Assembly: GCF_002113885.1 (NCBI RefSeq)
Contig: NW_018405300.1
Location: 413,913-477,912, forward strand
From: Mizuhopecten yessoensis
Lineage: Eukaryota
Direction: 5' to 3'
Length of the DNA stretch: 64,000 nt
Below the pieces are notes generated by a model. It was not told the origin of the DNA. It saw nothing but the letters and a program-made list of their open reading frames with translations, and did no database searches. Of the stretch, positions 1-55,000 are shown piece after piece; the stretch's first letter is position 1; each line of letters opens with the position of its first letter. A program made the translations under genes and the position numbers.

Positions 1-793
1 TCATAAATGCACCATTCTTACACAACAGCAGAATCTTGGTGTTTATAAAGGGATTCACCCAGAGGTTAAGCTTACTTACGTTCTACAGATCGTAAATGAG
101 CGTAACCCCCAGATTTCGGTGATGTGGTAGGTTGTGGAAGACAGTTATCATTGTAGAAATTGAAATTAATTAATTCTAGAGTAAATAATTTCATGAAATA
201 CGAGATTTAAAGGGTACCGCTAATCCATAGTTGAGCGAATAAATCATTTTTATAGCGCTAATACAGTTATACCGTACAAATGTATATACTTACGAACCAT
301 TTTGTGATTTTTGTATGATAGATTTCGTTGGGTACAGTATGATAACAGTTTATTAAAATTAATGTATAACATACTTGATTTGAAGATTTTAACTCCTTAA
401 AAATCACTCTTGCACGAAAAGATAATTTTTAATTCTATGTACCACTAACTTTGCAATTGCATTTAAAAATCGACATTTTCATCAATCGTAGGGAGATCCA
501 AATCTACATATTATATATATTATGAATGAATCAATCTGAGTAATTTTTGTTTTTGTATTTTACCATTGAAATAAAATCCGCCACTTGCGTAAGATAATGG
601 AATAAATTGTAACACTGAACGATACAAATTTTAAAGCAGATATTTTTCGTAGACGCCTATGTTATTTCCAGATACAAAGTAAGAAACTTAACGAAATCAA
701 TACTGTTTTAAACTGAATGAATTTAAAATATTTTTTGACCGTAATGAAAGTATGCGTTACGTTCAGTATCATTTGCCATTACAGATTTTCGCC

Positions 794-3700
794 ATGTCCG
801 CCGTTTTGTGGGTGTGTATGTGTGGTGCCCTCTGGGTCCTGGTCACGACTTTGCCGGTACAACAGCAGTCTGTTCAGGACTGGGTGGATCCAGGTAAGGG
901 ACAGTCAGGCCTCATAAAACGGTTTCTCGGTGTTGACAAAGTAAACACAACGCACATTCTAGTTAATTGATAAAGACAGTTTTACATGATGTTACATTGA
1001 TTTATAAATTAGATATGCATATTGAAATTACTAGTTCATATTTCATAAACAAGCAAATTTATCTTTTCGAAAACTATTGAAAGAAGAACGTATATTAATA
1101 AACAGTTAAAACAACAACGACCGAAATAGGGATATACACTTTTAAATTAATTAAAACCGAAACGGTGTATACCAGAATATGTATTAATTAAACAATTTAA
1201 ACGATAACGGCCTTAAGATGGACATATATTGGTAAATAATTAAAACAAAAACGGTTTATACCAGAATATGTATTAATTAAACAATTTAAACGACAACGGC
1301 CTTAACATGGACATATATTGGTAAATAATTAAAACAAAAACGGTTTATAACAGAATATGTATTAATTAAACAATTCAAACGATAACGGCCTTAAGATGGA
1401 CATATATTGGTAAATAATTGAAATCAAAACGGTTTATACCAGCTAAAGTATTCATAAAACAATGAAAACCTAAACGGCCTTAACAGGGACATAATTTATT
1501 AAAATAATTAAAACCAAAACGGTTTATACCAGAATATGTATTAATTAAACAATTTAAACGACAACGACCTTAAGATGGACATATATTGGTAAATAATCAA
1601 AATCAAAACGGTTTATACCAGAACATGTATTAATTATACAATTCGCTTGACAACGGTCAACATTTTTAAAACAATCAAAACTACAACGGTCTAAGCAGGA
1701 CTTGTATTAATCAAATGATTAAAACGACACCAGTCTGCACCAGAATGAATCCACGCTCAGACTCAAATTATGTGCTCGAACTGTCTTTCCTGTAAGTCGC
1801 CGAACCTTGCAATGAGATCAAAAGTATATAGTAAGGCTTATGCTAAATTCATAGGACATTTTATATAATATGATATTTTAAAGGACGTTTTCTCATTTTG
1901 ATAAGGTCCACTTTCGTGGGACGTCAAGGTCAGAAACACGGATGTTTGGCCACATCCTAGTCTGATGTAGAATTCAAGTTTTATTCGAACTTTAGGCCAT
2001 TGGCCCATCAGTATACAATACATATTATACACAAATCATGGACTTAATGTACAGATAATGAAGGCAATCATATTCCATTTTGATACCCTTAATTTGTTTG
2101 CCTCATAGATGAATTTTTCCTAGTATACACAATTCTTTAATATTATGGACACTCAATAACTGAACGGCTTTAACACAGATGTTTTTTTCCAATAATAGCT
2201 TTTTGATAAAACGTGATCTGAGATTTTGGAATTTAGAACAGAGTAATAAAAAATGAAATTCGTCCTCTACTTCAGAGGGGGAGTTACACTGTTTACAATA
2301 TCTACGTTCTCTAGGTATATTTTTATACCTTCCAATTTCTACAGCCAAAGACNCATATTCCATTTTGATACCCTTAATTTGTTTGCCTCATAGATGAATT
2401 TTTCCTAGTATACACAATTCTTTAATATTATGGACACTCAATAACTGAACGGCTTTAACACAGATGTTTTTTTCCAATAATAGCTTTTTGATAAAACGTG
2501 ATCTGAGATTTTGGAATTTAGAACAGAGTAATAAAAAATGAAATTCGTCCTCTACTTCAGAGGGGGAGTTACACTGTTTACAATATCTACGTTCTCTAGG
2601 TATATTTTTATACCTTCCAATTTCTACAGCCAAAGACTGTGTAGATGTACGGATTCGAGTTAAACAAATGCGATATTTCATTGGTATATATTTTGTGAGG
2701 TAAAATTGTAATGATTCTCCGAAATTAATGATATTTTTATATAATAAACATTTTGGAGAGTTTTCCATTGAGGCCCTAAGGGATTGTATGCCTTGATCAA
2801 AAATTCTTTGTTTTATCAATGGTAATAACACATTTTGCTGAGAAATACATGCATGGATTTAACCAAACATCCTTAAGACCTAGATTATTCAGTTCATCTT
2901 TAGTCCAGTTGAAATCATTTTTACTACAACATTTTAATAAAAAAAATCTATAGGAAGTGGAAATGATACAATTTTAAGATTTTAAGATCTTAAACCAATA
3001 TTTTATCATTCTAATTTTTCTCATACAAACTAGAGGTAATCGTCCCAATTCAAGATATACCATGTTGTTATTGGCCGATTTCTTCACTTTTAGTAATTTT
3101 TACAAAAATGTAAATGTACATGTTCTATCTCTGGAGCTTTGTGCATACACCAAATTTCACTTGCATAAAAAAGGATACTGCTTACATATGTATCGAAAAG
3201 GTGTAGCATAGTTTTTACATTTAAGTTTAATGATGAACACTTTGAAAATAGTGCAAACATAGCTTTTCGTCCTTGGATAGCTAATTGTTTTTGGATAGAA
3301 GTGAATTTATTATTGTAATTTAGAATAACACCTAGGTAAGGAAATTGATCCACACATTCGACTTTACTTCCTTTGTAATACCATTTTTCATCATTATGTA
3401 ATTTTTTCACATTTTCTAAAAACTACAATTTTTGTTTTTCCGTATTTACAGTTAAACTCATTTTTGTAGAGTATTCAAAAAGGCTATCAAGAAGAGTCTG
3501 CAGACCNTCGACGTCATAATATGTTGCATCTTTTTCAATAAAGGACATTTCAAAATCATTAATAAAAAGTGAAAACAGCAATGGTGACAAAATTTCCCCT
3601 TGCAATAAACCGACATTGTTTTCAAAAAAGTTAGAGCATTTCCCATTAATTGAAACACAGGATTTGACTGATATATAAAGCGACTTAATAACAGACAACA

Positions 3701-6700
3701 TTTTCCCTCGAATACCAAGCCTAGTCAACTTGCGCCATGAGCTTAACCTGTCGACAAAATCAAACGCTTTGCGAAAATCTACAAAATAACAGTACAATCT
3801 TTTCTTAGATGGCAATGTTTTTGTTATAATAGTATGTAATGCAAATATAGCATCTATCGTACTCACTTCCGGACGAAATCCGAATTGAGCATCTGTTAAA
3901 ATATCATATTTTGTACAAACATCTAAAATACGTTTATTAAGTATAGAAGTAAAAAGTTTACTAAGACAGCTTATTAAACTGATGCCTCGAAAGTTATTAG
4001 GGTCATTACGTGTACCTTTTTTATGAACAGGAATAATAATAGCCGGTGTGGTTATCGTTTTCGTGTTTTTTGAGTCGAGACATTTTGATGTACATAACAT
4101 GAGCAAAACAAACACTTTTACGAACAGAGGAATAAAGCAATCTGAAACATTTCCCAGTGGATTTATTTCATAAACTATCCCGTGTTGTTTCCGTATAAAT
4201 CGATGACCTGTCATTTGACCGTTTATTACCTCATTAGCAGTACAAGGACACACACGGAAGCGTACATAATTGATTACCTCATCACTCATTAAGTCAGACT
4301 GACATTTGGTAATAGTATAATCTTAGTCGTTTTAATATTTATATAAAAATGAGATTGTGGACAGCTACTCAAGTTGAAGTATCGATTTTTAAATTTTAAT
4401 GGGACGAGACGAAAGTTTTTTTATCAGTTAAGTTGATATCCTCCAAAGCATGTCTGGACCAAATGGTTTTCGTCACACTCGTTGATAATGTCCGAAATCA
4501 ATGTCAGCAAAGTGTTGCATGATACTGGAGATTAAAGCTTGCTCTTTAACCACGGCATTATCTGTTGAATACGAACAATTATACTTGCGATAAGGAACCT
4601 AAACAAATAGACATAAACAAACAAACCTGATCTGAGATAATAAGTGAAGCCTCCCAACAAAACACATGCTTTCGTCCACCGCACCTTACGGTGCCTTCGG
4701 CCCTATGGATGTAAAGGGTGGTAAAACAATGTGATACCCTGTCACTCGATTTAGGTATATGACCGAAGGTAGAACATATCATGATACAAACTATGATATA
4801 AATATATATATATTTATATATTATAACGCGTTTAGGTAAGCTATAATATGTTAGATCAATTTCGTCATAATATGTTTGACATTCGTAATTTCTAGCTTCC
4901 CATTTTTTCTTTTGGCATTAAAATACTTCTTTTTAATATAAACTTTATTTCATTCCACATTAAGTTGCATGACACCACATAACATACAAAGTACAGAGGA
5001 ATGGGATCCGGAAACAAGTTGAAATAACCTTCACGAGAATTTATTTCATCAAATTATAGGCATGATGACAAAGTTACTGAATTCTATGGAAATTAAAGTA
5101 GAAAATTGAAATTTTGTGAGCGGGCTTGCGTAGATAGGTTTTTAAGTTTATAATTTGAAGGGTAGTTCTTAATATAGTCAGGCAAGGAGTTCCAGATACT
5201 GATGACAGATGGCAACACAGATCTAGTGGACGAAAATGATTACCCGTGCGAGTATCATGGTTGTGATAATTTCGGTTACGCTGAGGTATAATATTAAGAA
5301 GGTATTGAGGTGCCAGACCGCGAACCATTTTGTGGAAAAGAATAAGCTTGTGCTGTTTACGTCTTTCCACGAGGGGAAGCCAACCTGTTTCGGTATACAG
5401 TTTAACTCTACTTGTGAGTCTAGTGCCGCCAGTGATTATGCGTGCTGCTTCTAATTGAAGATTTTCTAATAACTCAGATTGAGCTTTAGTAAGGCAGTCC
5501 CATAAGATATAGGTCGAATAAGAGTGTAGACTAGTATAAGTTTGGAGACTATACCTGTCCAAAGCGAATTTGAATTTACGTAACATATTTATTTTAGGTG
5601 AAATTCTAGATATTAAATAATTGATGTGCTCATTCCAATGACCATTTCCAGAGAGAAAAATACCTAAATGCTTGTGTGTAATAACTTCAGAGGTGTTAGT
5701 ATTGTTCATATTTAAGGGAGGGTGAAAAGGTTTAATGTTTTTTCTACTAATGAGCAGGGTTTCTGTTTTGGAAGGGTTAAAATGTACTAACCATCTTTGC
5801 GACCAGTTATGAATGTTATTAAGGTCACTATTAAGAATTTCTGCGCTGACTCTAGGAATATCAACAGTGATGTAAAGAGAGGTGTCATCAGTGAATAATT
5901 TATTTTAGCTTGTATATCTTTAACAATGTCATTTATATATATCAGAAATAAAAGAGGCCCAATAATTGAGCCCTGTGGAACATCAGTCTTAACATGTAAC
6001 CAATTTGATTTTTTACCATTGATGACAACTGTCGGCTTTTGATTGGAGAGATAATTTTCAAACCAAACTGATAGCGAATTTCGAATCCCATAGCTGGATA
6101 ATTTACAAAGAAGGCTTTTATGCCAAACACGATCTNATTCAGATGGGAATACCCCAGATCTAATTGATCTGTTAAAGAGATTAATTAAGGGGACACATAT
6201 GATATTTACTGATTCTTTAAAAAGACGAGGATTTACCAGGTCAGAACCAATGGCCTTAGAACTGTTAGTGGTAAGAATAGCATCTGTGACATCATTAGCT
6301 GTGATGTTGATATCAGATTCATTTTAATATCACATAAGGAATTATTACATTCACTTTTTTTAGTGACACATTCCCAATTTATCAACAATCAGTCAACAGA
6401 TTTCTCATGTTAAACGTTGTTTTGTTTTCGATACATTTTTAGATTTTGTTGAAGTTGTCAATTGGAGGCGTACCTTGAAATCAGCACGATATGATTTTTT
6501 TCATTGCAGTAAATGAGCCAGTAGACCAGCAGAAGAGCTTCATTCTACAACCAAATGGGCTCCAAAACCAAAGGAAACAACAAAGTAGCTTGCCAAAAGC
6601 AAATCCATTTGCACACAAAAACAATCTGAGACGCATTGGTTTCCACAACAAAAATAATTTCGTTTTTCGTGATCAACCAATATCTGTAATTGGACCAGAC

Positions 6701-8434
6701 GGGCAGGTATACTACGTAGGTAACCAGCTCAGCCCAGCTAAAAACGTCCCAAAGACACCATCTGTTGTACCACAGGCTCCCGTCACAGACAACACGGTTC
6801 CACTACCGTCTCTCGGTTTCGGAACTCAGCCAGAAATGATGCTCTCTCATCCAGAACAGCCGAGTCAGGAAGCGCTCATGTTGGACAACACTGAGACAAG
6901 TCCAGCCCAGTCTATTTTAGAAGCCGAAATACAGTCGTTACAGAGAAAGCTTCCGTTAGAACCAGCAATTCCAGATATTTTGCAAACAGCTACAGTCATG
7001 ACAACGAATAACGATAACACAGGTAGTGATGACGATGATGATATTAAGGATGATGACATTAATGATGATGACTCAAATGATGACGACGATGACGATTTAA
7101 ATGATGAACACGATGATAATGTAAATAATGACGACGATGACGACATTAATAACGAAGACGATGACGACGTCAACAATGAAGACGATGACGGCGTAAATGC
7201 TGAAGACGATGACGAGACAAATAATGAAGATGATGATACAAATAATGAAGGTGTTGATAACGTAAATGCTGAAAACGATGACGATACAAATAATGAAGAT
7301 GATGATAACGAAAATGCTGAAAACGATGACGATACAAATAATGAAGATGATGATAACGAAAATGCTGAAAACGATGACGATACAAATAATGAAGATGATA
7401 ACAACGTTTATACTGAAGACGATGACGATACAAATAATGAAGATGAGGATAACGTAAATGCTGAAAACGATGACGATACAAATAATGAAGATGATAACAA
7501 CGTTAATACTGAAGACGATGACGATACAAATAATGAAGGGGATGATAACGTAAATGCTGAAGACGATGACGATACAAATAATGAAGATGATAACAACGTT
7601 TATACTGAAGACGATGACGATACAAATAATGAAGATGATGTTAACGTAAATGCTGAAAACGATGACGATACAAATAATGAAGATGATAACAACGCTAATA
7701 CTGAAGACGATGACGATACAAATAATGAAGATTATGATATAAATAATGAAGACGATGATACAAATAATGAAGACGATGATAACGTTAATGCTGATGGCAA
7801 TGACGATACGAATAATGAAGATGATGACGTAAATACTGACACAAATAATGAGGATGATGACAACAATGTCGAAGAAGGTGATGATACAAATATTGAAAAC
7901 GATGACGACGTAAATAATAATACTGATGATATAAATGATGACACTAATACCGATGATGATAACGACATAAATGATGACAATGGTGATGTTATGAACGATG
8001 ATATAGATAATGAAGACATACACACAGATAATGAAGACAACGATGATGTAAATGATCAAAACGAAAACGACAATGAAGATGAAAACGATACAACTGAGGA
8101 TGATGCAAATGATTCAAACAACGAGCAGACAAATGCTATCACAGAAGCTGACGATGACATCGATAACGACAACGAAGTTGATGATGTAACTGACGCGAAT
8201 ATAAACGAAAATGACGGTGATGACAATAATGAAGATGAAGAGGAAATTTTCCAGGGCGATTTCAATGAAAACACAGTTCCTTCTATAGAAGATATAGAAG
8301 ATATAGTAGACGTCGAATCAATAGAAAATGACATTGACGAAGAAAAAGACGCTTTTGATGATAACAGTATTGATGATAATGACGAGGACGACAATGACGA
8401 GGATGACAATGATGATGATGTTGATGTAGGTGGC

Positions 8435-8477
<43 letters not shown>

Positions 8478-9958
8478 CAATAAATCACTTTAATGAATTA
8501 ATCAATTCAGCAGATACAGACAACGACGAAACAATTGAAAATACTGATAATGTACAATCAAACGAAATCGGTATAAACGACGACGACAATGATGATGATA
8601 ACGACGATGATGNNNNNNNNNNNNNNNNNNNNNNNNNNNNNNNNNNNNNNNNNNNNNNNNNNNNNNNNNNNNNNNNNNNNNNNNNNNNNNNNNNNNNNNN
8701 NNNNNNNNNNNNNNNNNNNNNNNNNNNNNNNNNNNNNNNNNNNNNNNNNNNNNTGAACGAATCTGAGAAGGAGATGGATACGGACGTTGACGATAATGAC
8801 GAGGGTATTCCAAGTGTAGAATTATCATCAGGGGAAGCAGTTGGCAGCAACGACGACAATGTTAATGATTTAATATCAAACGATTTTAATGTATCTGATG
8901 AGAAGGAGGACGAGGAGGACGAGGAGGATGGCAACAAAGACGATGCTGATGTAGAAGGCGATACTCCAAGTGCAGAATTACTACCAGAGCAAACACCAGA
9001 TAACATCAACAATGATGATGTACAATCAAACGAGTTAAATGGGTCTGAAGGGGAGGAGGAGGACAATGACGATAAAGAAGACGACGACACTCCAAGTGCG
9101 GAATTATTATCAGGAGAACAAGTGGTCGACGACGAACATGAAGACGCCGATGATATAAACTCAACCACGTTAAATGAATCTAAGGAGGACATGGACGGGG
9201 ATGATGAAGACGATGACGATGAAAAAGACGGAGCGTCAACTGCAGCATTACTANNNNNNNNNNNNNNNNNNNNNNNNNNNNNNNNNNNNNNNNNNNNNNN
9301 NNNNNNNNNNNNNNNNNNNNNNNNNNNNNNNNNNNNNNNNNNNNNNNNNNNNNNNNNNNNNNNNNNNNNNNNNNNNNNNNNNNNNNNNNNNNNNNNTCAT
9401 GATGCCGATTATGATAACAAATATGAAGAGGAGGTGGAGGAGGAGGAAGATGATGATGAGGAGGAGGAGGAGGAGGAAGACGACGGTTTAATTAAGGCTT
9501 TTAAAAATCACATCGCTACTAAATTTGGTATCGACCTGACCGGTATTAATGATCCTGATCAGCTGCTTGATCATTTGAGTGAGGTCATGGAAGATACCTC
9601 AAATAGCGAGAGCAATGAGAACAGTGAAGTCAACTATGAATTACTGGGCAAATTGGGATTTAAACAATCAGGCGATGAGAGTTCGGACGAATTCCTTGAG
9701 AAAGTGCTTGATGAAATTGAGGGTCATTCTGGAAGCGAGGAAAGTAGAGAAAGTTCAAATGAAACCGAGGAAGACTCAGAAGAGGATGTTTCTGAATCAG
9801 ATTCTAGCATTCAGCCGATTGTGATGGATTCCCCGTATGCTTTACCTAACGAAGGATATGCCATCAGTCCGGACATGGTGTTTGACGACGTGGTGGGAGC
9901 ATCTCTCCAAGGTGTAGATAACACAGAAGTTGTATCATTACCTGTCGGAGCCCTCTGA
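794..9958 (+). CDS. Secreted, highly acidic Asp/Asn/Glu-rich repetitive protein (~1182 aa incl. N gaps); candidate shell/biomineralization matrix protein; 2 coding exons
   Basis: Exon 794-893 (acceptor cag at 782-784, GCCATG start, MSAVLWVCMCGALWVLVTT-LP hydrophobic signal-like N-terminus, donor CAG|GTAAGG) joins in phase 1 to exon 6510-9958 (acceptor ttttcattgcag|, G+TA=Val). Long D/N/E tracts with a 16-aa repeat. N gaps at 8613-8753 and 9254-9396. AATAAA at ~10380. Confidence 0.85.
1095..1740. repeat. Intronic tandem repeat, ~89-bp unit (dimer of ~45-bp subunits), ~6-7 copies
   Basis: Motif ccagaatatgtattaattaaacaatttaaacg...aacggtttata recurs at 1172, 1261, 1350, 1439, 1529 and 1618. Confidence 0.9.
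1970..4045 (-). mobile_element. 5'-truncated, decayed non-LTR retrotransposon (LINE; RTE-X-like ORF2: RT plus C-terminal CCHC zinc knuckle)
   Basis: ORF pieces 3423-4045 (PNNFRGISLISCLSKLFT, QFGFR, FVDFRKAFD, GLLQGEILSPLLF), 3090-3410 (YLGVIL) and 2388-2831 (RYCKQC..VEDEFHFLLLC), with stops and frameshifts. Minus-strand AATAAA tail near 1980. The clade call is tentative. Confidence 0.85.
5000..6320 (-). mobile_element. Decayed CR1/L2-group LINE fragment (RT and C-terminus)
   Basis: Minus-strand translations VPQGSIIGPLLFL (~5945-5985), LFTDDT (~5881-5898), HKHLGIFLS..W..HIN and LENLQLEAARIITG..GWLPLVERR (ORF 5074-5709), with frameshifts. Confidence 0.85.
7190..7790 (+). repeat. Coding tandem repeat, 48 bp / 16 aa (NAENDDDTNNEDDDNV-type), ~12 copies with alternating NAEN/(Y,N)TED variants
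   Basis: Visible directly in the DNA (aaatgctgaaaacgatgacgatacaaataatgaagatgatgataacg) and in the 6491-9958 translation. Confidence 0.9.
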
Positions 9959-10409
9959 TCTCATCACATGGTGGGTCCATGGCCCTATGAACAATTAATC
10001 ACATCCTAAGTGCCATTTTAGGGTCACTGGTAAAAGGTATTTAGGCTTTGTAACTTCACGAACAATTCTTTAAGCTTGTTTTTTCTATGGAAGTGTGACA
10101 GAAAAGCTTTATTGAGATCGAGAACTTTTATGAAATTAAAAGAAATCGAATGGTAATATTCAAGTACATTATCGTCATTTTAAACAGCTGTTATATTTTC
10201 TACGGTTGAATTGATAGGCAAATCAACGTGCATACAGAGTAACAGCTATGTAACGTAATCGTCGTTCAATTTTTATTGAGAATTGTAACGCATATAATTT
10301 ATTTGACAGTTTTGCTGATAACATGTTGATGGTAATACTCTACAGTTTAGACTTAAGGTGTACAAGATTGTATACAAACAATAAAGAAAACTTCTATTAA
10401 TTAAACAAG

Positions 10410-43068: not shown

Positions 43069-46000
43069 TCATAGTCCGTTGTACATACTATAACACTGTG
43101 GGTGATACTTATGTGGCCCTACATCCTGCAAAACACCCGAGGGTGAACAAATCCAGGGGTCAAAGGTTATATTCTGCCACATATTCAATTGGTTCTGCAG
43201 CTGATGATAAACCTTTGAGTGACTTGGATCACGAGCTAAATTGTGGAGTTCCTGTGGGTCAGTAACTATGTTGAAGAGTTCCCACTGGTCCCTGTAGTAG
43301 TAGTTGTGGAGAGTTTTGTACCAGTGTGTTTCCTTTCCCTGCTGTGTTCTGTTCAGCAGATCTTGGAATGTCCTTGAAACAAAAAAATCCTGATCTATCA
43401 TGAATGGCATTTGAAAGTTAATATTTTGAATGAGCTTGTATTGTTTGTTTCTTACCACCCTCATAGGGTAGTACATTGTCACCTCGTGGAGGCTGTGACT
43501 GGCATATACAGTATCCCAAGATTCCTTTGGTTCCTCCTTAAGCAAAGGGAGTAAAGACTTGCCGGTCAAGGTCACAGCATTTTTGAGGATCTTGTAGTGA
43601 GGATATTTGACACCAAACCAGTCCAGTACTGTAGGGAGAATGTCCACATGGCTCAACATAGCATCACTTTTCTGAAATTTCAAAGGTATTCTTAAACACC
43701 AGTACTGCCTTCCCAATATTCTAAATCACCAGTACTGCCTTCCCAATATTCTAATCACCAGTACTGCCTTCCCAATATTCTTAAACACCAGTACTGCCTT
43801 CCCAATATTCTAAAACACCAGTACTGCCTTCCCAATATTCTAAAACACCAGTACTGCCTTCCCAATATTCTAAAACACCAGTACTGCCTTCCCAATATTC
43901 TAAATCACCAGTACTGCCTTCCCAATATTCTAAATCACCAGTACTGCCTTCCCAATATTCTAAATCACCAGTACTGCCTTCCCAATATTCTAAATCACCA
44001 GTACTGCCTTCCCAATATTCTAAATCACCAGTACTGCCTTCCCAATATTCTAAATCACCAGTACTGCCTTCCCAATATTCTAAATCACCAGTACTGCCTT
44101 CCCAATATTCTTATCACCAGTACTGCCTTCCCAATATTCTAAAACACCAGTACTGCCTTCCCAATATTCTAAAACACCAGTACTACCTTCCCAATATTCT
44201 AAAACACCAGTACTGCCTTCCCAATGTTCTAAAATACCAGTACTGCCTTCCCAAGACACATGTATGTATTACAAGTTTAGTGAATACAGCTGAAGTAGCA
44301 ACAAAGTTATGCTGTCGAAAATCTTTGGCATAAAAATAAACAAAGGGCCATAACTCTGTATGGGACGAGCACAAGACCAAAATTCAGCATGTGACATTTC
44401 ACCTTCTCAACCTACATAATTATAGAAAGTTCAGTGAATGTAGGCGAAAGAACAAAGAAGTAATGTTAAAGACAAACTTTGTTAAAAGACAAACTTTGGT
44501 GTAAAAAACAGAACAAAGGGCAATAACTGCATATGATGGGACAGGAGACCTGATTTTGGTATGCATAACTCTGTCTTACCACAACACATAAGTAGAGCAA
44601 GTTCAGTGAATATGGGTGTAATAGCAAGGAAAAAAATAGCTTTTTGTTTTTAAACAAACCATTTTCCTCAGGTTGAAATTATATTTATCCACCATTACAA
44701 TTGGGAAAATACAGTTCAAATTTATATTTCAGGGAAAAAGCCTGCATTACGTCATAAGTACTACAAAATCACTATTCAGGAATATTTTTTGTGCCACTTG
44801 AATGTTGAAGAGGAATATTGTGAAAGCAACCAAGGATATGAACGACAGAACTTTATCTGTTATTATACTGGATTAAATTTGCCAAGACTCCCCATTTTAT
44901 GTTTCCGTGTCATTACTTTCTGTTATCATATTTGTTTATAAATAAAATAATTTAAATGACAATCTCAACCTGGTAAAACTTTATGTGTTCATGAGAAATA
45001 TTTAGTTCATTAATACTACCCACCTGTCCCAAGCGCTTCCTATGGTATGGTGAGGACATAATGAATGGTTCAGCCAAACCTGAGTCATACAAATTGGTGC
45101 GGCCATTGGGGAAAGGTATGCCATTGTCGGAGGAGTACATGACGAGAGTGTCATCTGCATGGCCTGCCAACTCTAGCTCCTTCAGTATAAGACCTATACC
45201 TTGAGGCACAAAAAAGATACAATGATGTTTATGCTCCAGGGAAGATACATCGTTTACTACAATGCTCTCTTCATGGCCTGCTGCCTCTACGTCGTTCAGT
45301 ACAACTTTCTCTCACAAAGCACTGTAAACCACTTTATTTTTATGAGGACTTTAATTTGCAAACTAAGCCTGTAGCTTTTATCTGCAAATGCTTGAATTTT
45401 TGATTGGGATGAAGCTATCATAATATTGATATTACTTATCTATAGAACTAATATGTGTTGAATATTTAAATCAAAAGAGTTGTATTGCCATTTTGATGCA
45501 AAAATAATCTCTCATAGAAAAAAGTGATTCATAGTATGTGTGTAGGAGAGCAAGTAATTTGTTAGATTGTTGTCTACAAATCCTGCTCTTATTAATTCAG
45601 TACTAGGCCTGGACATTTCAGTATAAAGTGACTTAGCATTAAATGTTTAGAAGGTTAACAGTGTGATGAAAACAAATTTCTGAAGTCTCTTTTTGTCATA
45701 TTTGAAGATGTAAAGACATACAAATCTGATGAGAATTTTCAAATAAAACTTTAAAATCAAAGAGGACCTTGATCTGAACGTCTCTCAATTCTTCTAAACC
45801 CTAACTGGGACGTCGGTTAGATAGAGATTTCCCATTGAGTAATGACTGGTTATCATGTTTATCTAACTTGAGATAGTTAATTTTCAAATTGTATGAAGAC
45901 ATGAGGTTTATAAAGAGTCTTTTACAATTTGAGAATTAACTTACACGTTTCTGTTGGAAAATACACTTAGATGAATTTGCAAAGAACTGTTGCACGACGT

Positions 46001-49000
46001 TATAATGAAAAGATTGACCAATGAAATGATGTACAGGGTGTCACCCACTAGTAGGTAACCAAAAATGTTTACAAACTACTAGCCGGTTTATTCAATGAGT
46101 CATTAGTGAGCTGTGGGTAAATTTTTTGATACTTTAGAGCACAAAGTCTATCTTGCTTAACATGCCGAATTAATGCTGTGCGTACCCCACATTGTATACA
46201 TATGGTATGCATGGAGTCCTAATAAATTCTGCTCAAGGCTGTATACAAAGACATAAGAATCCTAATAGTTTACCTTGGTCCATACGGTTTATGGTGGTGT
46301 ACTGGGCAGCAATGTCCAGTCTGGCAGCAGGAGTGTCCTGGACAAAATAGGGAACAACCACAGATGCAGGATCAAAAAAGACTGGATTCCAATCAGGCAT
46401 GGTCCCATCAGCACCGAACTTCTCACAGAACTGTCCGTACTGGGGATGGGTGTGACCACATCGATGGGGGTCGTGGAATGCCACATACAGAAAGAAAGGA
46501 CTGGAATATAGATTAGAAAATACAGCAAACTAAATGCGATGAAATTCAATAATGTAGAGGTGGAGCTGGGTTGGTGGGTGGAGGTGGGAGAGGGAACTGA
46601 TTTTGTGGGTGGAGGTGGGAGAGGGATCTGATTTTGTGGATGGAGGTGGGAGAGGGAACTGATTTTGTAGGTGGAGGGGGGAGAGGGGACTGATTTTGTG
46701 GGTGGAGGTGGGGGAGGGAACTGATTTTGTGGGTGGGGGTGGGAGAGGGAACTGATTTTGTGGGTGAAGGTGGGAGTGGGAACTGATTTTGTGGGTGGAG
46801 GAGGGAGAGGGAACTGATTTTGTCGGTGGAGGTGGGAGAGGGAACTGATTTTGTAGGTGGGGGTGGGAGAGGGAACTGATTTTGTGGGTGAAGGGGGGAG
46901 GGGGAACTGATTTTGTGGGTGGAGGTGGGAGAGGGAACTGGTTTTGTGGGTGGAGGTGGGGGAGGGAACTGATTTTGTAGGTGGAGGTGGGAGAGGGAAC
47001 TGATTTTGTGGGTGGAGGTTGGGAATGGGACTGACTTTGTGGGTGGAGGTTGGGAATGGGACTGACTTCGTGGGAGGGCCTGGGGGTGGAACTGGCACAG
47101 TGGGTGAAGGTGGGAGATGGAACTTGCTTAGTGGGTGGAGGTGGGAGATGGGACTGATTTTGTGGGTGGAGATGGGGGATGGGTTTGGCCTGGTGGGAGG
47201 GGCTGTGGGACAGAAGTGGCTTGGTCAGTATGGGTAGGGGATGGGGGGAGATTTTTGGGACTGGTTTGGTGGGTGCAAAGTTACGTTTGAACTAGTGGAG
47301 TTTTCTAATTGTTTTTCTAACTTCAATATTAACAAAATATTTCAATGTCCATGTATATGCTTTAATTGGGCACATAATATAAACGAAGCTCATTTCCATT
47401 CTATCGCACTATTGTGAAACTAATGCTTGTTTTGCAAAAATCATATCTAATAGAATCTTGTTTGACATCCTCTATATGGTGCAAAAGTGGTAAATAGTGT
47501 GATAACATTTAGAGTGCAAAAGTTGTAATTACAAAATGAGACACATTTTAAACTATACCAGTTACTGGTATATTAATATATCCTGCCTAACATCCTTCAA
47601 CTGAAGGCATATAGATTGTTGTTGTGTGCGGTCACATGTTTTAACAATACATGTGATCTATATCAATGGACACACAAATTGTATTACACCATAAATTTTA
47701 CCATTAATTTATGGTGACACCAGTTTCTTTAATTATCTCCCTTGATATATCACCAAACAGCCAAAATGTGAATTAATAAATTGATAACTTTACATTTGGT
47801 GGTCATGTGGGGAAGCTCTCACCTGGAAGAATTTTGACGCAGAAACTCACGCACATGTTGACGAATGAAGGTGATGTTTCTTCCTGTTTGCAGAATACTG
47901 TGGCCATCAAGTTCAGTTACGGAATAATCAAATGGGTATACTGACTCAGGACCCAGATTCTTCTTACCAATTATACCTGGTAAAGGGTAACAAAGTGAAG
48001 TTAAACATATAAAGCTAATAACCTTCTTAAAGTTTAAACATGCAAGTGGCCTCCATACCTCACCCCAACAACCTGTCAACCAGTATTCACACCTGTCCAG
48101 TCTCTGCTCCTTGTTTTACCTGTCCCGACCCTCTCTCCTGTTCTACCTGTTCTGACCCCTCTCTCCTGTCTAACCTGTTCCGACCCTCTCTCCTGTCTTA
48201 CCTGTTCCGACCCTCTCTCCTGTCTTACCTGTCCTGACCCTCTCTCCTGTCTAACCTGTTCCGACCCTCTCTCCTGTCTTACCTGTTCCGACCCTCTCTC
48301 CTGTCTTACCTGTCCTGACCCTCTCTTCTGTCTAACCTGTACTGACCCTCTCTTCTGTCTTACCTGTCCTGGCCCTCTCTTCTGTCTTACCTGTCCTGAC
48401 CCTCTCTTCTGTCTTACCTGTCCTGACCCTCTCTCCTGTCTTACCTCTCCTCACTCGCTCTTCTGTCTAACCTGCCCCAATCCTCTCTTCTGTCTAACCT
48501 GTCCTGACCCTCTCTCCTGTCTTACCTGTCCCCACCCTCTCTTCCGTCTAACCTGACCTGACTCTCTCTCCTGTCTAACCTGTCCTGACCCTCGCTTCTG
48601 TCTTACCTGTCCTGACCCTCTCTTCTGTCTAACCTGTCCTGACCCTCTCTCCTGTCTAACCTGTCCTGACCCTCTCTCCTGGCTAACCTGTCCTGACCCT
48701 CTCTCCTGTCTAACCTGTCCTGACCCTCGCTTCTGTCTTACCTGTCCTGACCCTCGCTTCTGTCTTACCTGTCCTGACCCTCTCTTCTGTCTTACCTGTC
48801 CTGACCCTCTCTTCTGTCTTACCTGTTTTGACCCTCTCTCTTGTCTTACCTGTTCGGACACCTGCCCCTTTTAATAGTGATGGCAGGCTTCTGACGTCCT
48901 CAAACGACTGAAAGTGGTGGTAGCCATTGAACAGCCCGTACATTCCATTCTGGTGCTGTGGTAATCCTGACAACACCACTGACCTGTAAACATTTTCCCA

Positions 49001-52000
49001 TTATCAACTGTATTTTATAAAACAAGTACACTCCCCTACCCCAGTATGTTATTTATTGTTAATTAGATTTATTGTTTACCTAATATTTCTTAATAATGAA
49101 GTCATCTAGTGCTGATTCTTCCATCTATCGCCCTATTATGGAATGCTGATAAAAATCAAGAAATGTTTTTTTGGCAATATGTTAAATGCTTACAGGTATA
49201 TTAGAAAGCTGTCCTACATCCTACATCACTATTTACAATATACCTAGAATATGCTTTTCTCATATGTCTATCATATCATAAAAATGTATGTTACAAATCT
49301 AGAGAATGTTGATTGAATGACTTACATTGGAAATTGATATGTGCATGTCAATACTGATTTCAGATCCAATAACAAAACAATAACAGGTTTTTCACTTGCT
49401 CAGTATGCTTCCATATTTTCCATCTACTGCTTTAATTATATATGTATACCTGCTTGGTGAACAACTGCTGACAGATGTAAAAGCGTTGTTAAAAACCAAA
49501 CTCCTCTCTGCTAACTTGTTCAGGTTTGGTGTCTTACATATTTCATTGTTGTACACCTGTGTCTCAAATCCAGCATCATCCCCTAAAAAAGAAATATACA
49601 AATCTAGGGGATGATCCTGGATTTGTATAATTCTGTTTAAGAGGATGAAAATCCATCATCATCCCCTGTACAGATTTATACAAATCCAGCATCATCCCCT
49701 AAACCAGATTTATACGAATTCAGCATCATCCCCTGTACAGATTATACAAATCCAGCATCATCCCCTGTACAGATTTATACAAATCCGGCATCATCCCCTG
49801 TACAGATTTATACAAATCAATCATCATGCCCTGTACAGATTTATACAAATCCAGCATCATCCCCCGGTCAAATTTATACAAATCCAGCATCATCCCCTGT
49901 AAAGATTTATACAAATCCAGCATCATCCCCTAAACCAGATTTATACGAATTCAGGATCATCCCCTGTACAGATTATACAAATCCAGCATCATCCCCTGTA
50001 CAGCTTTATACAAATCCAGCATCATCCCCTGTACAAATTTATACAAATCCAGCATCATCCCCTGTAAAGATTTATACAAATCCAGCATCATCCCCTAAAC
50101 CAGATTTATACAAATCTATCATCATCCCCTGTACAGATTTATACAAATCTATCATCATCCCCTTTACAGATTTATACAAATCCAGCATCATCCCCTAAAC
50201 CAGATTTATATGAATTCAGCATCATCCCCTGTACAGATTATACAAATACAGCATCATCCCCTGTACAGATTTATACAAATCTATCATCATCCCCTGTACA
50301 GATTTATACAAATCTATCATCATCCCCTAAAACAGATTTATACAAATCTATCATCATCCCCTTTACAGATTTATACAAATCCAGCATCATCCCCCGGTCA
50401 AATTTATACAAATCCAGCATCATCCCCTGTAAAGATTTATACAAATCCAGCATCATCCCCTAAACCAGATTTATACAAATCTATCATCATCCCCTGTACA
50501 GATTTATACAAATCAATCATCATTCCCTGTACAGATTTATACAAATCCAGCATCATCCTCTAAACCAGATTTATACAAATCCAGCATCATCCCCTGCACA
50601 GATTTATACAAATCCAGCATCATCCCCTGTACAGATTGATACCAATCAATCATCATCCCCTAAAACAGATTTATACAAATGCAGCATCATCCCCTGTACA
50701 GATTTATACAAATCAATCATCATTCCCTGTACAGATTTATACAAATCCAGCATCATCCCCTGTACAGCTTTATACAAATCCAGCATCATCCCCTGTACAA
50801 ATTTATACAAATCCAGCATCATCCCCTGTACAGAATGATACCAATCAATCATCATCCCCTAAAACAGATTTATACAAATCCGGCATCATCCCCTGTACAG
50901 ATTTATACAAATCTATCATCATCCCCTGTACAGATTTATACAAATCTATCATCATCCCCTAAACCAGATTTATACAAATCTAGCATCATCCCCTAAAACA
51001 GATTTATACAAATCCAGCATCATCCCCTGTACTGATTGATGCAAATCCAGCATCATCTCCTGTACAGATTTATACAAATCCAGCATCATACCCTAAAACA
51101 GATTTATACAAATCTATCATCATCCCCTGTACAGATTTATACAAATCCAGCATCATCCCCTGTACAGATTTATACAAATCCAGCATCATCCCCTGTACAG
51201 ATTTATACAAATCCATCATCATCCCCTGTACAGATTTATACAAATCCAGCATCATCCCCTGTACAGATTTATACAAATCCAGCATCATCCCCTGTACAGA
51301 TTTATACAAATCCAGCATCATCCCCTGTACAGATTTATACAAATCCAGCATCATCCCCTGTACAGATTTATACAAATCCAGCATCATCCCCTGTACAGAT
51401 TTATACAAATCCAGCATCATCCCCTGTACAGATTTATACAAATCCAGCATCATCCCCTGTACAGATTTATACAAATCCAGCATCATCCCCTGTACAGATT
51501 TATACAAATCCAGCATCATCCCCTGTACAGATTTATACAAATCCAGCATCATCCCCTGTACAGATTTATACAAATCCAGCATCATCCCCTGTACAGATTT
51601 ATACAAATCCAGCATCATCCCCTGTACAGATTTATACAAATCCAGCATCATCCCCTGTACAGATTTATACAAATCCAGCATCATCCCCTGTACAGATTTA
51701 TACAAATCCAGCATCATCCCCTGTACAGATTTATACAAATCCAGCATCATCCCCTGTACAGATTTATACAAATCCAGCATCATCCCCTGTACAGATTTAT
51801 ACAAATCCAGCATCATCCCCTGTACAGATTTATACAAATCCAGCATCATCCCCTGTACAGATTTATACAAATCCAGCATCATCCCCTGTACAGATTTATA
51901 CAAATCCAGCATCATCCCCTGTACAGATTTATACAAATCCAGCATCATCCCCTGTACAGATTTATACAAATCCAGCATCATCCCCTGTACAGATTTATAC

Positions 52001-55000
52001 AAATCCAGCATCATCCCCTGTACAGATTTATACAAATCCAGCATCATCCCCTGTACAGATTTATACAAATCCAGCATCATCCCCTGTACAGATTTATACA
52101 AATCCAGCATCATCCCCTGTACAGATTTATACAAATCCAGCATCATCCCCTGTACAGATTTATACAAATCCAGCATCATCCCCTGTACAGATTTATACAA
52201 ATCCAGCATCATCCCCTGTACAGATTTATACAAATCCAGCATCATCCCCTGTACAGATTTATACAAATCCAGCATCATCCCCTGTACAGATTTATACAAA
52301 TCCAGCATCATCCCCTGTACAGATTTATACAAATCCAGCATCATCCCCTGTACAGATTTATACAAATCCAGCATCATCCCCTGTACAGATTTATACAAAT
52401 CCAGCATCATCCCCTGTACAGATTTATACAAATCCAGCATCATCCCCTGTACAGATTTATACAAATCCAGCATCATCCCCTGTACAGATTTATACAAATC
52501 CAGCATCATCCCCTGTACAGATTTATACAAATCCAGCATCATCCCCTGTACAGATTTATACAAATCCAGCATCATCCCCTGTACAGATTTATACAAATCC
52601 AGCATCATCCCCTGTACAGATTTATACAAATCCAGCATCATCCCCTGTACAGATTTATACAAATCCAGCATCATCCCCTGTACAGATTTATACAAATCCA
52701 GCATCATCCCCTGTACAGATTTATACAAATCCAGCATCATCCCCTGTACAGATTTATACAAATCCAGCATCATCCCCTGTACAGATTTATACAAATCCAG
52801 CATCATCCCCTGTACAGATTTATACAAATCCAGCATCATCCCCTGTACAGATTTATACAAATCCAGCATCATCCCCTGTACAGATTTATACAAATCCAGC
52901 ATCATCCCCTGTACAGATTTATACAAATCCAGCATCATCCCCTGTACAGATTTATACAAATCCAGCATCATCCCCTGTACAGATTTATACAAATCCAGCA
53001 TCATCCCCTGTACAGATTTATACAAATCCAGCATCATCCCCTGTACAGATTTATACAAATCCAGCATCATCCCCTGTACAGATTTATACAAATCCAGCAT
53101 CATCCCCTGTACAGATTTATACAAATCCAGCATCATCCCCTGTACAGATTTATACAAATCCAGCATCATCCCCTGTACAGATTTATACAAATCCAGCATC
53201 ATCCCCTGTACAGATTTATACAAATCCAGCATCATCCCCTGTACAGATTTATACAAATCCAGCATCATCCCCTGTACAGATTTATACAAATCCAGCATCA
53301 TCCCCTGTACAGATTTATACAAATCCAGCATCATCCCCTGTACAGATTTATACAAATCCAGCATCATCCCCTGTACAGATTTATACAAATCCAGCATCAT
53401 CCCCTGTACAGATTTATACAAATCCAGCATCATCCCCTGTACAGATTTATACAAATCCAGCATCATCCCCTGTACAGATTTATACAAATCCAGCATCATC
53501 CCCTGTACAGATTTATACAAATCCAGCATCATCCCCTGTACAGATTTATACAAATCCAGCATCATCCCCTGTACAGATTTATACAAATCCAGCATCATCC
53601 CCTGTACAGATTTATACAAATCCAGCATCATCCCCTGTACAGATTTATACAAATCCAGCATCATCCCCTGTACAGATTTATACAAATCCAGCATCATCCC
53701 CTGTACAGATTTATACAAATCCAGCATCATCCCCTGTACAGATTTATACAAATCCAGCATCATCCCCTGTACAGATTTATACAAATCCAGCATCATCCCC
53801 TGTACAGATTTATACAAATCCAGCATCATCCCCTGTACAGATTTATACAAATCCAGCATCATCCCCTGTACAGATTTATACAAATCCAGCATCATCCCCT
53901 GTACAGATTTATACAAATCCAGCATCATCCCCTGTACAGATTTATACAAATCCAGCATCATCCCCTGTACAGATTTATACAAATCCAGCATCATCCCCTG
54001 TACAGATTTATACAAATCCAGCATCATCCCCTGTACAGATTTATACAAATCCAGCATCATCCCCTGTACAGATTTATACAAATCCAGCATCATCCCCTGT
54101 ACAGATTTATACAAATCCAGCATCATCCCCTGTACAGATTTATACAAATCCAGCATCATCCCCTGTACAGATTTATACAAATCCAGCATCATCCCCTGTA
54201 CAGATTTATACAAATCTATCATCATCCCCTGTACAGATTTATACAAATCCATCATCATCCCCTAAAACAGATTCNNNNNNNNNNNNNNNNNNNNNNNNNN
54301 NNNNNNNNNNNNNNNNNNNNNNNNNNNNNNNNNNNNNNNNNNNNNNNNNNNNNNNNNNNNNNNNNNNNNNNAACAGATTTATACAAATCTATCATCATCC
54401 CCTGTACAGATTTATACAATTCATCAGCATCCCCTGTACAGATTTATACAAATCCAGCATCATTCCCTGTACAGCTTTATACAAATCTATCATCATCTCC
54501 TGTACAGATTTATACAAATCCAGCATCATTCCCTGTACAGATTTATACAAATCCAGCATCATCCCCTGTACAGATTTATACAAATCTATCATCATCCCCT
54601 GTACAGATTTATACAAATCCAGCATTATCCCCTAAAACAGATTTATACAAATGCAGCATCATCCTTCAAAACAGATTTATACAAATCCAGCATCATCTCC
54701 TGTACAGATTGATACAAATCCAGCATCATCTCCTGTACAGATTTATACAAATCCAGCATCATACCCTAAAACAGATTTATACGAATCCAGCATCATCCCC
54801 TGTACAGATTTATACAAATCCAGCATCATACCCTGTACAAATTTATACAAATCCAGCATCATCCCCTGTACAGATTTATACAAATACTGCATCATCCCCT
54901 AAACCAGATTTATACAAATCTATCATCATCCCCTGTACAGATTTATACAAATCTATCATCATCCCCTAAAACAGATTTATACAAATGCAGCATCATCCCC

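What the first reader, a model, noticed from the sequence alone, without database searches (positions are those of the whole stretch)
794..9958. Large secreted poly-acidic protein with modular design: candidate undescribed biomineralization protein
Seen: a signal-peptide exon (the ORF track does not join it to the large ORF) splices in phase to a 3.4-kb exon. The protein runs: basic/aromatic N-terminal segment (KNNLRRIGFHNKNNFVFR, possible dibasic site), Pro/Gln linker, ~550 aa of D/N/E with a 16-aa repeat, poly-Asp, 3-4 copies of a PS(A/V)ELL..E..DD.QSNELN module, and poly-Glu. It ends in a short amphipathic domain (GLIKAFKNHIATKFGIDL..LLDHLSEVM) and Ser-x-Glu clusters. No Cys is visible after the signal peptide. 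Known: Asp-rich secreted proteins (Aspein, Asprich, MSP-1) control calcite formation in bivalve shells, and S-x-E is the Fam20C kinase motif. Inference: a distinct Asn-rich family lacking the Ser-Gly-Asp repeats of Aspein/MSP-1.
Basis: partly seen in the sequence, partly recalled or inferred. Interest (0 to 1): 0.75.

Follow-up and report, generated by a model that had tools for sequence, protein, structure and literature searches.

The report
Scallop secreted poly-acidic orphan protein gene
The Yesso scallop genome holds a single-copy gene, listed in GenBank only as a 194-residue fragment, that encodes a roughly 1,200-residue exported, structureless, extremely negatively charged protein with no detectable relatives; a role in shell mineral formation is plausible, but I could not test it.

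Summary
Exon 1 (794-893: start codon, hydrophobic leader, consensus donor) joins in phase to a strong acceptor at 6509/6510. A 3.4-kb frame then stays open to 9958. That exon is 26% Asp, 16% Asn and 13% Glu, with net charge about -380 and no Cys. It contains a 48-bp repeat of 16.5 copies, a run of 14 Asp, 3-4 acidic modules, a poly-Glu stretch and a short helical tail.

Each of the three sequence blocks around the two N gaps has one open frame, nominally the same frame. True continuity across the gaps cannot be known.

The organism is Mizuhopecten yessoensis. GenBank model OWF52091.1 (194 aa, "hypothetical protein") uses the same exon 1-exon 2 junction but cuts out the acidic region around both gaps, which is probably a gap artefact.

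The gene is single-copy. I found no Pfam family, no solved-structure relative and no homologue: a HMMER search of 1.84 billion representatives with the C-terminus gave nothing. S-x-E motifs are no more frequent than composition predicts. There are no Ser-Gly-Asp, EF-hand or TSP3 motifs.

The biomineralization reading is plausible by analogy with Aspein, Asprich and MSP-1 but unproven. My verdict is a new member of a known kind, of moderate interest.

The parts
794..893 (+). Exon 1: start codon and 33 codons plus 1 base. An uncharged MSA start is followed by a 17-residue hydrophobic core (the only hydrophobic segment in the protein) and a polar Gln-rich end. The donor is CCAG|GTAAGG.
   Evidence: Kyte-Doolittle 19-residue maximum 2.09 here; at most 0.84 elsewhere. 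GenBank model OWF52091.1 uses the same exon. Single copy in the genome. An in-frame ATG at 752 and a possible acceptor at about 784 leave the true 5' end open.
894..6509 (+). Intron of 5.6 kb, phase 1. It is filled with decayed non-LTR retrotransposon pieces on the minus strand and ends in a T-rich tract plus CAG.
   Evidence: RVT_1 Pfam hit, E 1.9e-22, on 3426-4289 minus strand.
6510..7000 (+). Start of exon 2: a basic head (11 K/R against 5 D/E in 95 residues; dibasic RK, RR, RK) followed by a Pro/Gln/Ser-rich linker. GC is 45% against about 32% background.
   Evidence: The AF2 single-sequence model is mostly disordered (mean pLDDT 55.6), with one hairpin at residues 57-69 and one helix at 131-145. 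No Pfam or PDB relatives.
7001..8612 (+). Asp/Asn/Glu tract of 537 residues: 50% D+E, 23.5% N, 0.4% K+R. It contains the repeat array and the poly-Asp run.
   Evidence: Only one frame is open. Both synonymous codons are used at about 2:1, so it is not a pure GAT microsatellite.
7062..7839 (+). Tandem array of a 48-bp (16-aa) unit, 16.5 copies, organised as an alternating 96-bp pair. The 3' half of each unit is nearly identical between copies, which points to a young expansion.
8371..8477 (+). Triplet (GAT/GAC) run that encodes the poly-Asp block; the longest uninterrupted Asp run is 14.
8613..8753 (.). Assembly gap 1 (141 N) inside the acidic exon. Not filled.
8754..9253 (+). Acidic modules of 42-52 residues. 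Each has a short Thr-Pro-Ser-Ala-Glu-Leu-Leu-type hydrophobic patch followed by a D/E-rich stretch. There are 3 full copies, and a fourth is cut by gap 2. A related piece lies just before gap 1.
   Evidence: families D7 and D8, 65-76% identity, spacings 126-156 nt, all multiples of 3. No paralogue elsewhere in the genome.
9254..9396 (.). Assembly gap 2 (143 N). Not filled.
9397..9481 (+). Glu/Asp-rich block (poly-Glu, longest run 7).
9482..9958 (+). C-terminal 158 residues and the stop codon. Four short predicted helices form two similar helix-loop-helix halves. A Ser/Glu/Asp-rich stretch and a non-acidic tail follow. There is no membrane segment and no ER-retention motif.
   Evidence: mean pLDDT 52.8; helices 2-15, 25-40, 48-57, 68-81; similarity of the two halves scores 34 against 20.2 +/- 4.1 shuffled, p about 0.014. 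No relatives. Single copy.
10135..10385 (+). Candidate polyadenylation signals: ATTAAA at about 10135 and AATAAA at 10380. They would give a 3' UTR of about 0.2-0.45 kb. This is inference only.
   Evidence: Sequence read.

Best explanation
This is a real, single-copy, lineage-restricted gene of the Yesso scallop, mis-modelled in GenBank as the 194-aa protein OWF52091.1. It has at least two exons. Its product is at least about 1,085 known residues, or about 1,180 counting the gaps at their nominal size.

The product is exported, Cys-free and intrinsically disordered. In order it has a leader peptide, a short basic head, a Pro/Gln linker, about 540 residues of Asp/Asn/Glu that include a young, probably length-variable 16-residue repeat, acidic 45-50-residue modules, a poly-Glu stretch, and a small helical C-terminus.

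The most likely mode of action is inferred from composition and from known unusually acidic mollusc shell proteins. The dense carboxylate array would bind Ca2+ with high capacity and low affinity and adsorb to calcium carbonate surfaces or amorphous precursors. It would thereby control nucleation, polymorph or growth of the scallop's calcite. The basic head and C-terminal helices would dock it to other matrix components.

Shown here: the gene structure in sequence terms, the composition, and the absence of relatives. Inferred: secretion, Ca2+/mineral binding, and shell as the site of action.
For: - A long frame is open in only one of three frames in every block.
- GC is exon-like at both ends.
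- All internal repeat spacings are multiples of 3.
- Synonymous codons are mixed.
- The donor and acceptor are consensus and in phase, and the independent GenBank model uses the same junction.
- The only hydrophobic segment is at the N-terminus.
- D+E is 39% and net charge about -382.
- The models are disordered.
- The organism is a calcite-shelled scallop.
- The few known highly acidic pteriomorph shell proteins (MSP-1/2, Aspein, Asprich) are likewise lineage-specific, and new ones typically lack database relatives (PMC8217771 read; PMC6003135 read).
- The 433-residue stretch without K/R would hide most of the protein from trypsin-based shell proteomics.
Against: - No expression, tissue or junction evidence could be obtained.
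- No paper or supplement that I searched names the locus.
- No annotated protein anywhere contains the C-terminus. That may mean weak transcript support, or only that the gaps broke the models.
- The leader has no charged n-region and no clear cleavage site, so it could be a signal anchor.
- S-x-E motifs are not enriched.
- No defined Ca2+-binding motif is present.
- The neighbours are housekeeping genes (LRRC45, SGSH) and satellites, not a cluster of matrix genes.
Confidence: 0.42

Rival explanations
1. A luminal or granule polyanion, not a shell protein. It would be a high-capacity Ca2+ or metal buffer of the secretory pathway, of secretory granules, or of the calcium-phosphate concretions of the scallop kidney. 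It would work like calsequestrin, HRC or the granins without being related to them.
For: The same leader and extreme acidity. Dibasic sites occur only in the N-terminal head. The neighbourhood has no matrix genes. That scallop kidneys hold mineral concretions is my own knowledge and was not tested here.
Against: There is no ER-retention motif and no calsequestrin or granin family match. There is no Cys for a granin-type loop. Nothing positive points to these tissues.
Confidence: 0.18
2. A secreted polyanion with a non-mineral job, such as a component of mucus, egg or sperm coat, juvenile byssus or adhesive, or a hydration or lubrication polymer.
For: The architecture says only 'exported, disordered, acidic'. 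The gene is an orphan and rapidly evolving, as many reproductive and adhesive proteins are.
Against: There are few N-glycosylation sequons (9 in 1052 residues) and no mucin-like Ser/Thr/Pro tract. No family match was found.
Confidence: 0.15
3. The full-length reading is wrong. The acidic tract would be an expanded triplet or minisatellite inside an intron, the real product would be short as in OWF52091.1, or the locus would be silent or decaying.
For: The only deposited model removes 6797-8905. This genome makes long spurious ORFs from satellites; for example, locus L006 is open in three frames. The 48-bp array is young, with many non-synonymous differences between copies. No annotated protein holds the C-terminus.
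Against: Only one frame is open here, in contrast to L006. The repeat array covers only 780 of 3,450 nt. Non-repetitive, GC-richer coding-like sequence flanks the tract on both sides in the same frame. The deposited model's internal splice sites are weak (G|GTTCCA, A|GTGCGG) and sit so as to avoid both N gaps, which is typical of a gene predictor that cannot place N inside an exon.
Confidence: 0.15
4. The protein is not exported. Either exon 1 does not belong to it and translation starts at the in-frame ATG at 6491, giving a cytosolic or nuclear acidic protein, or the leader is an uncleaved anchor that tethers the polyanion to a membrane.
For: An ATG at 6491 opens the ORF. The leader lacks a charged n-region and has a rather long 17-residue core.
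Against: 6491-6509 reads as a textbook polypyrimidine tract plus CAG acceptor. Exon 1 joins in phase with a consensus donor, and the GenBank model uses the same junction.
Confidence: 0.08

Closest known systems
MSP-1 / MSP-2, acidic shell glycoproteins of the same scallop (Sarashina & Endo 1998, 2001; Hasegawa & Uchiyama 2005, as cited in PMC8217771)
   Same: Same species. Both have a signal peptide, a basic segment near the N-terminus, a long modular acidic body and very low pI, and both are built from tandem modules. The MSP-1 architecture is from my own knowledge and the citation.
   Different: MSP-1 is dominated by Ser-Gly and Asp domains. This protein has only 5.4% Ser and 3.9% Gly and no Ser-Gly-Asp repeats. 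It is rich in Asn and Glu instead. I made no direct alignment because no MSP-1 sequence was available from a tool.
Aspein (Pinctada) and the Asprich family (Atrina), unusually Asp-rich prismatic-calcite proteins
   Same: These are exported, Cys-poor, disordered polyanions with poly-Asp blocks. They are lineage-restricted with no relatives outside a narrow clade, and they are associated with calcite (PMC8217771; PMC6003135).
   Different: Aspein and Asprich reach up to about 75% Asp (PMC6003135) and, from my own knowledge, are only a few hundred residues long. This protein has 26% Asp plus 16% Asn and 13% Glu, is at least 1,085 residues long, and has distinct non-acidic ends. Shell localisation is proven for them and unknown here.
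Clade-specific D-rich shell proteins found by proteomics (Tridacna Tcr_654638; Haliotis idb_22086 / Tri_57798)
   Same: They are acidic low-complexity proteins with D-rich repeats and no significant similarity to anything in databases, and are interpreted as independent recruitments.
   Different: Those were identified in the shell itself. This one is known only from genome sequence.
Calsequestrin / histidine-rich Ca-binding protein / granins (functional analogues only)
   Same: A signal peptide and long acidic tracts that bind Ca2+ with high capacity and low affinity (my own knowledge).
   Different: No family match, no folded thioredoxin-like domains, no retention signal, no Cys and no His-rich repeats.

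Membership tests
Unusually acidic mollusc shell matrix proteins (functional class: MSP-1, Aspein, Asprich) | N-terminal secretion signal | tested here: inconclusive
   The only hydrophobic segment is residues 4-20 of exon 1. It has no charged n-region and no clear -3/-1 cleavage site. No signal-peptide predictor was available.
Unusually acidic mollusc shell matrix proteins (functional class: MSP-1, Aspein, Asprich) | Asp+Glu above 20% and very low pI (criterion quoted in PMC8217771) | tested here: met
   D+E is 39.1% and K+R 2.8%, with net charge about -382 over 1052 residues. The pI calculation hit the script's lower bound of 4.05, so the true value is lower.
Unusually acidic mollusc shell matrix proteins (functional class: MSP-1, Aspein, Asprich) | Presence in the shell matrix or expression in shell-secreting mantle | not testable with these tools
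No paper or supplement names the locus.
MSP-1 family (sequence membership) | Repeated Ser-Gly-rich and Asp-rich domain units | tested here: not met
   No SGD/DSG/SGS motifs in the acidic body and only 2 in the C-terminal tail. Ser is 5.4% and Gly 3.9%.
Fam20C-type secretory phosphoprotein (SIBLING/SCPP-like) | Enrichment of Ser-x-Glu/pSer motifs | tested here: not met
   The C-terminal block has 6 S-x-E against 4.2 +/- 1.7 in shuffles (p = 0.21). The whole exon has 18 sites, with only 4 in the first 700-residue block (6512-8611) and just 3 in its acidic tract. Individual sites may still be phosphorylated.
Calsequestrin / EF-hand / thrombospondin type-3 Ca2+-binding proteins | Family domain or Ca2+-binding loop motif | tested here: not met
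   No Pfam hit at E <= 1 apart from two chance-level matches. There are no EF-hand-loop or TSP3 pattern matches, and even a loose pattern gave 0 against 2.3 expected.
Granins / neuropeptide precursors | Multiple dibasic cleavage sites along the chain; N-terminal disulfide loop (CgA/CgB) | tested here: not met
   There are only three dibasic pairs, all within the first 145 residues of exon 2, and no Cys after the leader.

The most novel reading that the evidence does not exclude
The gene encodes a scallop-specific major Asx-rich soluble shell-matrix protein of foliated calcite. It would represent a class rich in Asn as well as Asp. Standard shell proteomics would have missed it because its acidic core has no tryptic sites, and annotation would have missed it because assembly gaps broke the model. 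Its young 16-residue repeat would make it length-polymorphic between individuals, which could tune shell properties.
Probability: 0.25. Interest if true: 0.6.

Novelty: new member of a known kind. Interest (0 to 1): 0.36.

Why it matters
Very few extremely acidic shell proteins are known from pteriomorph bivalves: MSP-1/2, Aspein and Asprich (PMC8217771). Classic amino-acid analyses nonetheless show Asx-rich soluble matrix to be central to calcite control. If mantle expression and shell presence are confirmed, this would be a second, unrelated polyanion type in the species where MSP-1 was discovered. It would also show that assembly gaps and trypsin-based proteomics systematically hide this class. 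If the gene proves to be expressed elsewhere, it remains a clean example of an orphan secreted polyanion built by recent in-frame minisatellite expansion. In either case GenBank model OWF52091.1 is probably wrong and should be revised once transcripts are mapped.

Tried and rejected
I then stopped, so read laying could not be used.

2. Word-based protein searches. The N-terminal region within whole-length candidates gave none. The C-terminal region within whole-length candidates was swamped by poly-Glu words and none scored. The N-terminal piece alone found only the species' own truncated model.

3. Full HMMER scan of 1.84 billion representatives with the C-terminal 158 residues: zero hits. 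The N-terminus was not searched this way because only one job is allowed.

4. ESM Atlas, both ends: no usable hit.

5. Pfam and PDB sequence searches: only chance-level matches.

6. AF2 single-sequence models of both ends had mean pLDDT of 52.8-55.6. That is too low for a meaningful fold search, so I ran none.

7. Paralogue search in the own genome: none for exon 1, the head, the modules or the tail. The acidic tract hits only compositionally similar ORFs and satellites.

8. Literature: the locus tag, GenBank accession and UniProt accession are absent from searchable full texts and from the supplements of two scallop mantle papers.

9. The look-up of encoding contigs for OWF52091.1: nothing on record.

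10. EF-hand, TSP3, S-x-E-enrichment and Ser-Gly-Asp ideas were tested and rejected.

The spliced (joined) protein was never assembled or searched by me. The exons were searched apart by reference, and the only joined sequence used was the database's own P0001. The N gaps were not filled.
Full report
**What is in the sequence**

The window is from the Yesso scallop, Mizuhopecten yessoensis. The only database protein matching the locus is 100% identical and carries that name. The genome holding the window has 988 Mb in 82,659 contigs, and the window is C1973:413913-477912.

A single + strand frame is open from 6491 to the stop at 9956-9958, 1155 codons counting N as X. Positions 6497-6509 read as a T-rich tract ending in CAG, so the coding exon most likely begins at 6510.

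At 794 an ATG opens 33 codons plus one base that end at a consensus donor, CCAG|GTAAGG after 893. The last G of exon 1 plus TA at 6510-6511 makes a Val codon, in frame with the long ORF.

The 5.6-kb intron holds decayed retrotransposon pieces on the opposite strand (RVT_1, E 1.9e-22).

**The gaps (tested first, as asked)**

The N runs are 8613-8753 (141 N) and 9254-9396 (143 N). Each of the three sequenced blocks has exactly one frame free of stops, and nominally it is the same frame. The other frames carry 35/208, 7/24 and 32/5 stops.

The acidic style continues up to each gap edge, and the fourth copy of a 46-nt module repeat runs into gap 2. This makes one continuous exon the simplest reading. 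Gap sizes are only estimates, however, so frame continuity and true protein length cannot be established.

**Is it coding or a satellite artefact?**

This genome does produce long spurious ORFs from satellites. Locus L006 is open in three frames at once, and the 20 kb upstream of the window is mostly minisatellite. The present ORF differs in five ways:

- Only one frame is open.
- The 48-bp array (7062-7839, 16.5 copies, 81% matches) covers only about 780 of 3,450 nt.
- Both ends are non-repetitive and GC-richer (45% and 43% against about 32%).
- Both synonymous codons of Asp, Asn and Glu are used at roughly 2:1.
- Every start-to-start spacing in eight internal repeat families is a multiple of three.

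The array itself is young. It is an alternating 32-residue pair whose second half is almost invariant between copies, and most differences between copies are non-synonymous. It is therefore probably length-variable, and it says nothing about purifying selection.

**The product**

The leader is the only hydrophobic segment. Its Kyte-Doolittle 19-residue mean is 2.09, against at most 0.84 anywhere else. There is no other membrane segment and no ER-retention ending.

After the leader the parts run in this order:

- A basic head, with 11 K/R against 5 D/E in 95 residues. The only three dibasic pairs of the protein are in the head and the linker after it, within the first 145 residues.
- A Pro/Gln/Ser linker.
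- 537 residues with 50% D+E, 23.5% N and 0.4% K+R.
- A run of 14 Asp.
- Acidic modules of 42-52 residues, each with a small hydrophobic patch: 3 full copies and a fourth cut by gap 2.
- A Glu-rich block.
- A 158-residue tail.

Overall the known 1052 residues of exon 2 are 26.0% D, 15.7% N and 13.0% E. They contain no Cys or Trp, and net charge is about -382.

Single-sequence AlphaFold models of both ends have low confidence (mean pLDDT 55.6 and 52.8). They show only a hairpin and a helix in the head and four short helices in the tail. The two helix-loop-helix halves of the tail resemble each other modestly (score 34 against 20.2 +/- 4.1 shuffled, p about 0.014). I ran no fold search because models this weak give meaningless matches.

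**What did not hold**

- S-x-E motifs in the tail are at the level composition predicts (6 against 4.2 +/- 1.7).
- There are no EF-hand loops, no thrombospondin type-3 motifs and no Ser-Gly-Asp repeats.
- N-glycosylation sequons are few: 9.

**Relatives**

- Pfam gave nothing above chance.
- PDB sequence searches gave nothing above chance.
- The ESM Atlas gave no usable hit.
- Word-based searches of 5.8 billion proteins found only the species' own model.
- A full HMMER pass over 1.84 billion cluster representatives with the tail found nothing at E <= 0.001.
- In its own genome, exon 1, the head, the modules and the tail are each single-copy. The acidic tract matches only compositionally similar ORFs.

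Two limits apply. The head was not searched with the exhaustive tool, because only one job is allowed. Unannotated orthologues in other scallop genomes cannot be seen with the tools at hand.

**The existing annotation**

P0001 is OWF52091.1 / A0A210QTL9, "hypothetical protein KP79_PYT06239", 194 aa. When I mapped it back, it uses exon 1 (794-893) and the same acceptor (6510). It then leaves the ORF at 6796 through a weak donor (G|GTTCCA), re-enters at 8906, and leaves again near 9095 (A|GTGCGG) for a two-residue terminal piece.

Both excursions skip an N gap. This is what a predictor does when it cannot place N inside an exon, so I take the short model to be an artefact. The shared first junction is independent but still computational support.

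No searchable paper, and neither of the two supplements I checked, mentions the locus.

**What could not be done**

I stopped there, so no reads could be laid.

The joined spliced protein was not built or searched. Exons were queried separately by reference.

**Interpretation**

The sequence establishes an orphan gene for an exported, disordered polyanion. Function is inferred.

The closest known things by mode of action are the unusually acidic shell proteins of pteriomorph bivalves: MSP-1/2 of this very species, Aspein and Asprich. These are few and lineage-specific, and newly found ones likewise lack database relatives (PMC8217771; PMC6003135).

By that analogy the carboxylate array would sequester Ca2+ and adsorb to calcite or its amorphous precursor, with the basic head and helical tail docking to other matrix parts. 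Acid hydrolysis converts Asn to Asp (my own knowledge), so an Asn/Asp protein would have counted as "Asx-rich" in the classic analyses. Its 433-residue K/R-free core would escape tryptic proteomics.

Several facts count against committing strongly:

- There are no expression data.
- The neighbourhood holds housekeeping genes (LRRC45, SGSH) and satellites, not matrix genes.
- The leader is atypical.
- No annotated protein anywhere contains the tail.

The rivals are:

- A luminal, granule or kidney-concretion Ca2+ buffer.
- A non-mineral secreted polyanion.
- A wrong or silent full-length model.
- A non-exported or anchored product.

**Verdict**

- Observation: confirmed.
- Interpretation: partly supported.
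- Kind: a new member of the known kind "lineage-specific, highly acidic secreted mollusc protein".
- Sequence membership: none of MSP-1, Aspein/Asprich, calsequestrin, the granins or the SIBLING-type phosphoproteins.
- Interest: moderate. It would rise if mantle expression and shell presence are shown.

Noticed in passing
window 2103-2831 (minus strand): Two adjacent ORFs (2103-2363 and 2388-2831) end in the same 82-residue sequence. This is either a local tandem duplication inside the retroelement debris of the intron or an assembly duplication next to the single N at 2353.
   Followed up: no
window 3426-4289 (minus strand), 5077-5709 (minus strand): Decayed non-LTR retrotransposon within the intron. 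The first ORF has a reverse-transcriptase domain (RVT_1, E 1.9e-22). The second ORF has no Pfam match.
   Followed up: partly
L010 4800-9800 and L011 2689-3585 (G000:C1973:393913-413912, the 20 kb upstream of the window): The 20 kb upstream of the gene is dominated by minisatellite arrays that are open in several frames. I saw no obvious gene, so the acidic gene is not part of a visible matrix-gene cluster.
   Followed up: partly
L006 832-2552 (G000:C875): A satellite array gives ORFs of 497-570 codons in three frames at once. It is a useful negative control showing that long ORFs in this genome can be repeat artefacts.
   Followed up: partly
window 752-793: An in-frame ATG at 752 would add 14 residues, including Arg and His, ahead of the leader. 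A possible acceptor (…ccattacag) at about 784 suggests an untranslated upstream exon instead. The true 5' end is unknown.
   Followed up: no
window 43072-43716 (minus strand): Last exon of a sulfamidase (SGSH) gene (SGSH_C, E 1.1e-17). Its introns hold very large tandem arrays, for example 51036-54635, and Pro-rich and Gly/Gln/Arg-rich repeat ORFs at 46289-47098 and 48451-48861.
   Followed up: partly
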